Shown piece after piece: positions 46,405-47,322 of a stretch of 64,000 bases of DNA (the stretch's first letter is position 1; each line of letters begins with the position of its first letter). The position numbers and the translations under genes are program-made. The notes beneath the pieces are model-generated. The model did not search any database, was not told where the DNA came from, and saw nothing but the letters and a program-made list of their open reading frames with translations. The stretch spans positions 20,708,001 to 20,772,000 of the forward strand of contig OZ286466.1 of NCBI GenBank assembly GCA_965644265.1. Reading direction: 5' to 3'. The stretch comes from Glycera tridactyla. Its lineage: Eukaryota.

Positions 46405-47322
46405 CGTCACCTAGCGAGCAGTTGTTCCAAGGAAGATGGCTGGCAGCTGTCGAAACAGTCAACGACGTCACCTAGCGAGCGGTTGTTCCAAGGAAGATGG
46501 CTGGCAGCTGTCGAAACAGTCAACGACGTCACCTAGCGAGCAGTTGTTCCAAGGAAGATGGCTGGCAGCTGTAGAAACAGTCAACGACGTCACCTAGCGA
46601 GCAGTTGTTCCAAGGAAGATGGCTGGCAGCTGTCGAAACAGTCAACGACGTCACCTAGCGAGCAGTTGTTCCAAGGAAGATGGCTGGCAGCTGTCGAAAC
46701 AGTCAACGACGTCACCTAGCGAGCAGTTGTTCCAAGGAAGATGGCTGGCAGCTGTCGAAACAGTCAACGACGTCACCTAGCGAGCAGTTGTTCCAAGGAA
46801 GATGGCTGGCAGCTGTCGAAACAGTCAACGACGTCACCTAGCGAGCAGTTGTTCCAAGGAAGATGGCTGGCAGCTGTCGAAACAGTCAACGACGTCACCT
46901 AGCGAGCAGTTGTTCCAAGGAAGATGGCTGGCAGCTGTCGAAACAGTCAACGACGTCACCTAGCAAGCAGTTGTTCCAAGGAAGATGGCTGGCAGCTGTC
47001 GAAACAGTCAACGACGTCACCTAGCGAGCAGTTGTTCGAAGGAAGATGGCTGGCAGCTGTCGAAACAGTCAACGACGTCACCTAGCGAGCAGTTGTTCCA
47101 AGGAAGATGGCTGGCAGCTGTCGAAACAGTCAACGACGTCACCTAGCGAGCAGTTGTTCCAAGGAAGATGGCTGGCAGCTGTCGAAACAGTCAACGACGT
47201 CACCTAGCGAGCAGTTGTTCCAAGGAAGATGGCTGGCAGCTGTCGAAACAGTCAACGACGTCACCTAGCGAGCAGTTGTTCCAAGGAAGATGGCTGGCAG
47301 CTGTCGAAACAGTCAACGACGT
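46405..47322 (+). repeat. 61-bp tandem array, 15 near-identical units
   Basis: Unit cgtcacctagcgagcagttgttccaaggaagatggctggcagctgtcgaaacagtcaacga; I noticed only four single-base variants. Confidence 0.98.
46421..46466 (+). ncRNA. Minimal type I hammerhead ribozyme-like motif (unit 1 of 15), variant core
   Basis: Stem I GUUGUU/AACGAC; core CCAAGGA-A (vs CUGANGA); stem II GAUGGC-UGGCA-GCUGUC; GAAA; minimal stem III AC-A-GU; GUC cleavage triplet ending at 46460. Confidence 0.65.

What the first reader, a model, noticed from the sequence alone, without database searches (positions are those of the whole stretch)
46405..47322. 15x tandem array of a 61-nt monomer that is essentially one hammerhead-ribozyme fold, inside a Penelope 3' end
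Seen: each unit folds as a type I minimal hammerhead: stem I GUUGUU/AACGAC, core CCAAGGA+A, stem II GAUGGC/GCUGUC, GAAA, 2-bp stem III AC-A-GU and a GUC site, plus a 15-nt linker. The units are almost identical, and the array sits between a PLE GIY-YIG end and the rest of the PLE 3' UTR. Established: PLEs carry minimal hammerheads that cleave as dimers; metazoan retrozymes are tandem hammerhead repeats with monomers of roughly 150-400 nt; G5A is a standard inactivating mutation. Inference: this is either (a) an ultra-small retrozyme-like or rolling-circle product, in which a 61-nt self-cleaved, circularised RNA was reverse-transcribed by the PLE machinery into a multimer (far smaller than described monomers), or (b) a DNA-slippage expansion of a dead ribozyme. 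The U4C+G5A core (CCA could derive from CCG by CpG decay) argues that the present copies may be inactive unless the variant core works in multimers.
Basis: partly seen in the sequence, partly recalled or inferred. Interest (0 to 1): 0.8.

Follow-up and report, generated by a model that had tools for sequence, protein, structure and literature searches.

The report
Minisatellite from a dead Penelope hammerhead
A 61-base piece of a broken Penelope-like jumping gene, holding a mutated and probably dead copy of that element's small hammerhead-ribozyme motif, has been copied 15 times in a row at this one site, most likely by ordinary DNA repeat expansion in a genome full of such repeats.

Summary
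Window 46405-47322 is a 15.0-copy tandem array of a 61-nt unit; 11 units are identical and 4 carry one change each. Each unit reads as a minimal type I hammerhead-like motif with core CCAAGGA.

The array lies in a 5'-truncated remnant (about 325 bp without the extra copies) of a Penelope-like element (PLE). [quoted passage not shown]

The retrozyme or rolling-circle reading is not supported:
- A complete whole-genome listing of an exact 26-nt core pattern gives 46 places outside the array, none in a same-strand 61-nt tandem. BLAST-like searches show one unit per sister copy.
- All 15 units share four states that are rare or absent in sisters, including G5A. The unit carries the same load of such states (6.6%) as the flanks (7-9%), yet units differ from each other by only 0.9%. 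No sister is closer than 81-87% in the flanks.
- A CGT microhomology borders the unit.
- The genome holds about 80-160 minisatellites per Mb.

Rfam finds no hammerhead, there is no covariation, and no sequencing run was listed.

Verdict: a locus-specific minisatellite of a decayed PLE hammerhead-like motif. Low interest.

The parts
46220..46335 (+). 5'-truncated remnant of the PLE ORF (C-terminal end of the GIY-YIG endonuclease region), ending in a premature TGA at 46333-46335 where most sister copies have G at the mutated position
   Evidence: Sister copies align only from window 46220 onward, although they carry more PLE sequence upstream. The homologous ORF in sister L073 scores GIY-YIG at 25.7 bits against a cut-off of 22.6. 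The minority state at flank position 116 is.
46336..46404 (+). Former C-terminal tail of the PLE ORF, still an open frame in sister L073 and non-coding here
   Evidence: In L073 the ORF runs on to a TAG inside helix I. Alignment of 53 sister segments.
46405..47322 (+). Tandem array of 15 copies of a 61-nt unit plus 3 nt. Each unit is the last 16 nt of the former ORF plus the PLE hammerhead-like motif.
   Evidence: TRF, unit table, one unit per sister copy.
46421..46466 (+). Hammerhead-like motif of unit 1 (repeats every 61 nt): helix I 46421-26/46461-66, core CCAAGGA 46427-33 (U4C and G5A against the canonical core), extra A 46434, helix II 46435-40/46446-51, GAAA 46452-55, would-be cleavage after C 46460
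   Evidence: Direct reading, MFE fold, descriptor scan. No Rfam hammerhead hit.
47320..47322 (+). CGT at the 3' edge of the array, identical to the first 3 nt of every unit (46405-46407): a 3-nt microhomology bordering the duplicated segment
   Evidence: The T at unit position 3 is seen in 0 of 57 sister copies.
47323..47401 (+). Rest of the PLE tail. Counting from the GT at 47321, an intron-like stretch (GTAAGA...CAG, 47321-47384) is followed by ATG at 47385 and the element end near 47401.
   Evidence: Only the first 79 nt after the array are repeated in the genome. Sister copies end at the same point. The intron reading is an untested inference.

Best explanation
This is a locus-specific minisatellite. 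An old, 5'-truncated Penelope-like element remnant of about 325 bp sat here with one copy of the family's hammerhead-like motif. The remnant picked up point changes, among them G5A in the ribozyme core, a C-to-T that created a CGT at the future unit border, an A-to-T that removed the ORF stop codon in helix I, and an A-to-G in loop II. Later, a 61-bp segment bounded by CGT...CGT was duplicated at the DNA level by replication slippage or unequal exchange between the short direct repeats. Further unequal exchange expanded it to 15 copies. The units are predicted to be catalytically dead and the array to have no ribozyme-based function. Shown: the array, its uniqueness in the genome, the derived states shared by all units, and the high background of minisatellites. 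Inferred: the order of events and the slippage mechanism.
For: 1. Uniqueness. The complete whole-genome listing of a 26-nt core pattern gives 60 hits: 14 in this array and 46 elsewhere, and none of those 46 is in a same-strand 61-nt tandem. A BLAST-like search with three units finds only single-unit matches elsewhere.
2. Collinearity. Sister copies run from the upstream flank through one unit into the downstream tail without a break, so the array is an internal, in-register duplication.
3. Timing. States shared by 15% or fewer of sisters make up 13/185 positions (7.0%) upstream, 4/61 (6.6%) in the unit and 7/79 (8.9%) downstream. All four in the unit are present in all 15 units, while units differ pairwise by 0.87%. 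No sister is closer than 81-87% in the flanks, so a recent insertion from a living source is unlikely.
4. The loop II G variant occurs only in the array among all 60 exact hits.
5. CGT microhomology lies at both unit borders, and its T is private to this copy.
6. Background. There are 5 arrays (period >=15, >=3 copies) in this 64-kb window and 32 in 201 kb of sister loci, or about 80-160 per Mb. With at least 100-170 family copies of about 325 bp each, one hit in a PLE tail is expected by chance.
7. The core carries both U4C and G5A. G5 is an invariant catalytic residue (established hammerhead biochemistry).
Against: Concerted evolution could keep an old array homogeneous and spread private changes through it, so the identity argument dates the last homogenisation rather than strictly the birth of the array. 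Many window-minority states in the flanks are transversions, so some may be inherited from a lost source lineage rather than acquired here. A 3-nt microhomology is weak evidence. Copy number could not be checked against reads, because no run was listed. One unit border lies at the end of helix I, within 1-3 nt, which could hint at an RNA-level origin, though it is also where a splice-donor-like GT sits.
Confidence: 0.85

Rival explanations
1. The multimer was made by reverse transcription at insertion. The PLE reverse transcriptase copied a small circular or repeatedly re-primed 61-nt RNA (rolling circle or template jumping), giving a tandem cDNA that was integrated together with the PLE tail. 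This is the retrozyme-like reading.
For: PLEs and non-LTR retrozymes are linked in the literature: a circular-RNA, more-than-unit reverse-transcription model was proposed in PMC4209133, and retrozymes have been reported as pLTR derivatives in preprint 10.64898/2026.07.22.740005. The unit contains the whole hammerhead-like motif, and one unit border coincides with the end of helix I.
Against: A single hammerhead in the parent cannot excise a monomer, because two cleavage sites are needed. No other copy of the family has even a dimer. The array is in register with collinear PLE sequence on both sides. All units carry G5A plus three other copy-specific states. Units are 99% alike while the remnant has no relative closer than 81-87%. 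The unit borders are 5 nt away from the predicted cleavage site.
Confidence: 0.07
2. The array is functional. The variant core works in multimers, or the repeat is transcribed as a structured non-coding or small circular RNA of 61-nt units.
For: U4C hammerheads can keep enough activity in vivo (PMC3088659). PLE minimal hammerheads cleave only as dimers or trimers (PMC4209133), and an array supplies neighbouring copies.
Against: All units carry G5A on top of U4C. There is no Rfam hit. The fold is no more stable than shuffles, and in a dimer the lowest-energy fold pairs helix II strands between units instead. There is no covariation. It is a single locus, and the dimer helix III would carry a central A-A mismatch. 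No expression data could be obtained.
Confidence: 0.03
3. The array is real but its length is an assembly artefact, with the copy number collapsed or inflated.
For: Near-identical tandem units are hard to assemble, and no reads could be laid on the region.
Against: The array is only 918 bp, within the span of single long reads. It carries four distinct singleton variants at fixed places, and it lies in a large contig of a 207-contig, 2.04-Gb assembly.
Confidence: 0.05

Closest known systems
Minimal hammerhead motifs (min-HHR) of metazoan Penelope-like elements (Cervera & de la Pena 2014, PMC4209133)
   Same: The motif lies in the PLE 3'/pLTR region. [quoted passage not shown] Sister motifs often occur as inverted pairs 100-400 bp apart.
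   Different: The commonest core in the family is CCGAGGA (U4C) rather than CUGANGA, and this copy also has G5A. A single A sits between 15.2 and 16.2, so the dimer helix III would carry an A-A mismatch. Rfam models do not detect the motif in the window or in 20 sister loci.
Metazoan non-LTR retrozymes (tandem type I hammerhead repeats; PMC7229834)
   Same: Head-to-tail repeats, each with a hammerhead-type motif, and sequence kinship with a PLE terminal region.
   Different: [quoted passage not shown] Here the unit is 61 bp, there is one locus, the core is mutated, and there are no expression data.
Ordinary minisatellites born from a short internal duplication, including the 'mirage' arrays noted elsewhere in this genome
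   Same: Period of tens of bases, 15 near-identical units, a single-copy progenitor sequence, microhomology at the borders, and a genome with about 80-160 such arrays per Mb.
   Different: The amplified segment happens to be a transposon's ribozyme-like motif. Only the GT of the adjacent donor-like site is inside the unit, so it is not a full splice-site 'mirage'.

Membership tests
Hammerhead ribozyme (type I, PLE minimal variant) | Catalytic box C3-U4-G5-A6-N7-G8-A9 | tested here: not met
   The window units read CCAAGGA (U4C and G5A). Most sister copies read CCGAGGA (U4C only): 58 of 86 listed matches outside the array.
Hammerhead ribozyme (type I, PLE minimal variant) | G12-A13-A14, A15.1-U16.1 and a non-G at position 17 | tested here: met
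   GAAA followed by C-A-G-U-C in 14 of 15 units; unit 3 has lost C11.1.
Hammerhead ribozyme (type I, PLE minimal variant) | Helices I and II flanking the core, with G10.1-C11.1 and one unpaired nucleotide between 9 and 10.1 | tested here: met
   Helix I is 6/6 paired, helix II is 6-7 bp, and there is an extra A. The feature list comes from PMC4209133.
Hammerhead ribozyme (type I, PLE minimal variant) | Palindromic 15.2-16.2 or loop 3 that allows a dimeric helix III | tested here: inconclusive
   C15.2 and G16.2 can pair across two copies, but the single A between them would give an A-A mismatch (direct reading).
Hammerhead ribozyme (type I, PLE minimal variant) | Helices supported by compensatory changes among relatives | tested here: inconclusive
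   Across 44 copies there are 0 pairs with changes on both sides, and 88.1% of cells are paired, the same as in shuffles. The copies are too alike to be informative.
Hammerhead ribozyme (type I, PLE minimal variant) | Match to curated covariance models (Rfam hammerhead families) | tested here: not met
   No hammerhead hit at E<=10 in 45500-48500, none at gathering score in the window, and none in 20 sister loci.
Hammerhead ribozyme (type I, PLE minimal variant) | Self-cleavage | not testable with these tools
   Needs in vitro transcription assays.
Penelope-like element | Reverse transcriptase followed by a C-terminal GIY-YIG endonuclease | tested here: met
   In sister L073, RVT_1 scores 22.5 bits (below its cut-off) and GIY-YIG scores 25.7 bits (above its cut-off) on the same strand, directly upstream of the motif. 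The language-model look-alike search puts the reverse-transcriptase piece with animal RVT_1 clusters. The window itself keeps only about 38 codons.
Penelope-like element | Frequent 5' truncation and adjacent inverted copies | tested here: met
   The window copy starts at 46220. There are many inverted pairs of sister motifs, as described in PMC4209133 and PMC8557442.
Non-LTR retrozyme | Monomer of about 150-450 bp, present as tandem repeats at many loci | tested here: not met
   The unit is 61 bp, and this is the only array of the motif in 2.04 Gb. The size range is from PMC7229834.
Non-LTR retrozyme | Active canonical hammerhead in each monomer | tested here: not met
   The core has U4C and G5A, and there is no loop 1 for loop-loop contacts.
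Non-LTR retrozyme | Expression as linear and circular monomer RNA | not testable with these tools
   No sequencing run was listed for this stretch.
Minisatellite (DNA-level tandem expansion) | Near-identical head-to-tail units derived from a sequence that is single-copy in homologous elements | tested here: met
Minisatellite (DNA-level tandem expansion) | Expansion later than the origin of the flanking sequence | tested here: met
   Four copy-specific states are fixed in all units. Minority states make up 6.6% of the unit against 7-9% of the flanks, while units differ by 0.87%. Caveat: homogenisation could mimic this pattern.
Minisatellite (DNA-level tandem expansion) | Copy-number polymorphism between individuals | not testable with these tools
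   No reads or other assemblies were available.

The most novel reading that the evidence does not exclude
The locus captures the first step in the birth of a retrozyme-like satellite. A PLE terminal hammerhead segment is amplified in tandem at the DNA level, which would supply the neighbouring ribozyme copies that minimal PLE hammerheads need to cleave as dimers. In a copy with an intact core, such an array could yield very small self-processed RNAs. In this copy the core is already dead.
Probability: 0.05. Interest if true: 0.55.

Novelty: new member of a known kind. Interest (0 to 1): 0.2.

Why it matters
As it stands it matters little: it is one more transposon-derived minisatellite in a genome rich in them. 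Two side results have modest value. First, this PLE family's hammerhead-like motif has U4C as its commonest state, and CpG decay of CCG gives the canonical CUG in about a fifth of listed copies and the dead CCA in about a seventh. That makes it a natural series for testing how much U4 matters in minimal PLE hammerheads. Second, standard Rfam models miss these motifs completely, so PLE hammerheads are under-annotated in genomes like this one.

Tried and rejected
- Rfam cmscan on the region, the whole window and 20 sister loci found no hammerhead, only chance-level microRNA or snoRNA hits.
- The covariation test on 44 copies was uninformative: 0 compensatory pairs.
- Thermodynamic folding gave z-scores near 0. 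The dimer prefers pairing of helix II strands between units, and the sister monomer's lowest-energy fold is not the hammerhead.
I replaced it with the complete listing of an exact core pattern.
- The look-up of sequencing runs listed no run, so neither expression, RNA ends nor copy number could be checked, and read laying was not used.
- The Lunse et al. 2017 paper on PLE hammerhead dimers is not held in the library.
- Coding potential was rejected: 61 is not a multiple of 3, and every frame through the array has stops.
- Pfam on neighbouring ORFs (47806-48381, 49306-49665, 43135-43482 and others) found nothing, so no host-gene context was identified.
- I did not build or print a consensus of the element. 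Comparisons were made as counts of states among copies.

Full report
**1. Observation**

TRF reports one array at window 46405-47322: period 61, 15.0 copies, 99% matches, no indels. Eleven of the 15 units are identical and four carry one private substitution each. Mean pairwise difference is 0.87%.

- helix I GUUGUU/AACGAC
- core CCAAGGA, then an extra A
- helix II GAUGGC/GCUGUC
- GAAA, then C-A-G-U-C
- a 15-nt linker

RNAfold returns helices I and II as the minimum-energy fold of one unit. The fold is no more stable than shuffled sequence (z -0.09). In a two-unit RNA the best fold pairs helix II strands between units instead. A structure-aware descriptor of my own, allowing the variant core, matches 13 of 15 units and gave no hit in 300 shuffles of the window. 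I relaxed that descriptor after seeing the sequence, so this is not a formal significance test.

**2. Context: a Penelope-like element tail**

Whole-genome searches place the window in contig 18 of a 2.04-Gb, 207-contig assembly. They show that the unit and its flanks belong to a dispersed repeat family. Sister copies align from window 46220 through one unit into the 79 nt after the array (47323-47401), and then diverge.

A longer sister copy (L073, minus strand) has an ORF with an RVT_1 match (22.5 bits, below cut-off). It is followed by an ORF with a GIY-YIG match (25.7 bits, above cut-off). That second ORF ends in a TAG lying inside the 5' strand of helix I. A language-model look-alike search groups the reverse-transcriptase piece with animal RVT_1 clusters.

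Reverse transcriptase plus a C-terminal GIY-YIG endonuclease is the defining architecture of canonical Penelope-like elements (PLEs). The window copy is a 5'-truncated remnant of about 325 bp, counting one unit. It keeps about 38 codons of the endonuclease end and has a premature TGA at 46333-46335.

**3. Is the unit a hammerhead?**

It fits the minimal hammerheads described for metazoan PLEs in several respects (PMC4209133):
- position in the terminal region of the element
- type I topology
- a long helix II
- a G10.1-C11.1 pair
- an almost absent helix III
- frequent inverted pairs of motifs 100-700 bp apart, also seen here

It departs from them in other respects:
- Most sister copies read CCGAGGA. 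Of 86 listed core matches outside the array, 58 are CCG, 16 CTG and 12 CCA. U4C is therefore the family's commonest state.
- CTG and CCA are about equally frequent, as expected from CpG decay on either strand.
- U4C is a known natural variant that lowers activity considerably but can suffice in vivo (PMC3088659).
- G5 is an invariant catalytic residue (established knowledge), so the window units are predicted to be inactive.
- Rfam finds no hammerhead in the window or in 20 sister loci, even at E<=10.
- The 44 aligned copies show no compensatory change.

I treat the motif as the family's hammerhead homologue on the basis of position and architecture. Membership in the ribozyme class is not proven.

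**4. How the array arose**

*Uniqueness.* The complete whole-genome listing of a 26-nt exact core pattern gives 60 hits. Fourteen are in the array and 46 lie elsewhere, as single motifs, inverted pairs or copies kilobases apart. None of those 46 is in a same-strand 61-nt tandem. A search with three units finds only one-unit matches elsewhere.

*Register.* The array is collinear with PLE sequence on both sides, as an internal duplication would be.

*Timing.* I counted positions where 15% or fewer of sister copies share the window's base:

| Region | Minority positions | Share |
|---|---|---|
| Upstream flank | 13/185 | 7.0% |
| Unit | 4/61 | 6.6% |
| Downstream tail | 7/79 | 8.9% |

The four in the unit are T at position 3, T at position 19, A at position 25 (G5A) and G at position 39. 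All four are present in all 15 units. The loop G is found nowhere else among the 60 exact hits. No sister copy is closer than 81-87% in the flanks, so a recent insertion from a surviving source is unlikely. The units nevertheless differ by under 1%. The simplest history is a long period as a single decaying copy, followed by recent expansion.

*Borders.* The unit begins with CGT and the sequence after the last unit begins with CGT. The T of the first CGT is private to this copy (0 of 57 sisters). It turned a 2-nt into a 3-nt direct repeat 61 bp apart. This is weak evidence, but it fits slippage.

*Background.* The window has 5 arrays with period >=15 and >=3 copies, and 201 kb of sister loci have 32. 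That is about 80-160 per Mb. With at least 100-170 family copies, a minisatellite landing in one PLE tail is expected by chance. Earlier notes of this scan on the same genome also describe many 44-111-nt arrays. I checked only the general density myself.

**5. Rivals**

A rolling-circle or template-jumping cDNA origin at insertion needs several extra assumptions. A single-hammerhead parent cannot release a monomer. Both template switches would have to fall in register. The array would also have to be homogenised later to explain the shared private states. I give this 0.07. A functional variant-core multimer gets 0.03, and an error in assembled copy number 0.05. Concerted evolution is the main caveat to the dating argument.

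**6. What is known**

Non-LTR retrozymes have these properties (PMC7229834):
- tandem repeats of 150-450 bp
- many loci per genome
- canonical active hammerheads
- expression as linear and circular RNA

A 2026 preprint links them to PLE terminal regions. The array fails the size, multi-locus and intact-core criteria, and expression could not be tested because no run was listed. It is best filed as a transposon-derived minisatellite whose unit happens to be a decayed PLE minimal hammerhead-like motif.

**7. Verdict**

The novelty class is 'new member of a known kind' and interest is about 0.2. The most novel reading still open is that this is a first step toward a retrozyme-like satellite. I give it about 0.05.

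Noticed in passing
window 47321-47401; same stretch in sister loci (e.g. L073:320-405, minus strand): Directly after helix I, most sister copies read GTAAGT, then about 60 nt, then CTAAC..CAG, followed at once by ATG and the element's end about 17 nt later. This looks like a short spliceosomal intron followed by a start codon in the terminal redundancy. It recalls the intron next to the hammerhead of Drosophila virilis Penelope (PMC4209133). Splicing was not tested.
   Followed up: partly
G000, whole genome: The family core CCGAGGA contains a CpG at positions 4-5. Among listed copies outside the array, decay gives the canonical CUGAGGA in 16 and the G5A form in 12, against 58 intact CCG. Neutral decay therefore 'canonicalises' the core about as often as it kills it.
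   Followed up: partly
window 43644-44292, 11573-11951, 16033-17104, 7459-8171: There are further tandem arrays in the same window (210 nt x3.1, 45 nt x8.4, 146/298 nt x7.3/3.6, 356 nt x2.0). The genome is very rich in minisatellites.
   Followed up: partly
sister loci, e.g. G000:C31:37122876-37122981, C13:8909756-8910057, C34:59896330-59896461: Many sister motifs sit in head-to-head inverted pairs only tens to a few hundred bases apart, sometimes with the two hammerhead-like motifs almost abutting. This is the inverted 5'-truncated arrangement typical of PLE insertions.
   Followed up: partly
L038:280-1499: A 32-nt x38 array ends exactly where a sister PLE tail ends. This suggests insertion of the element next to or into a pre-existing tandem repeat; PLEs are reported to favour repeats.
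   Followed up: no
window 38400-40250: A long low-complexity block of GGT/GTG-type repeats on one side and CCA/CAAC-type repeats on the other (about 1.8 kb) forms a strand-switching simple-repeat region. Stop-free ORFs there are artefacts of the repeats.
   Followed up: no
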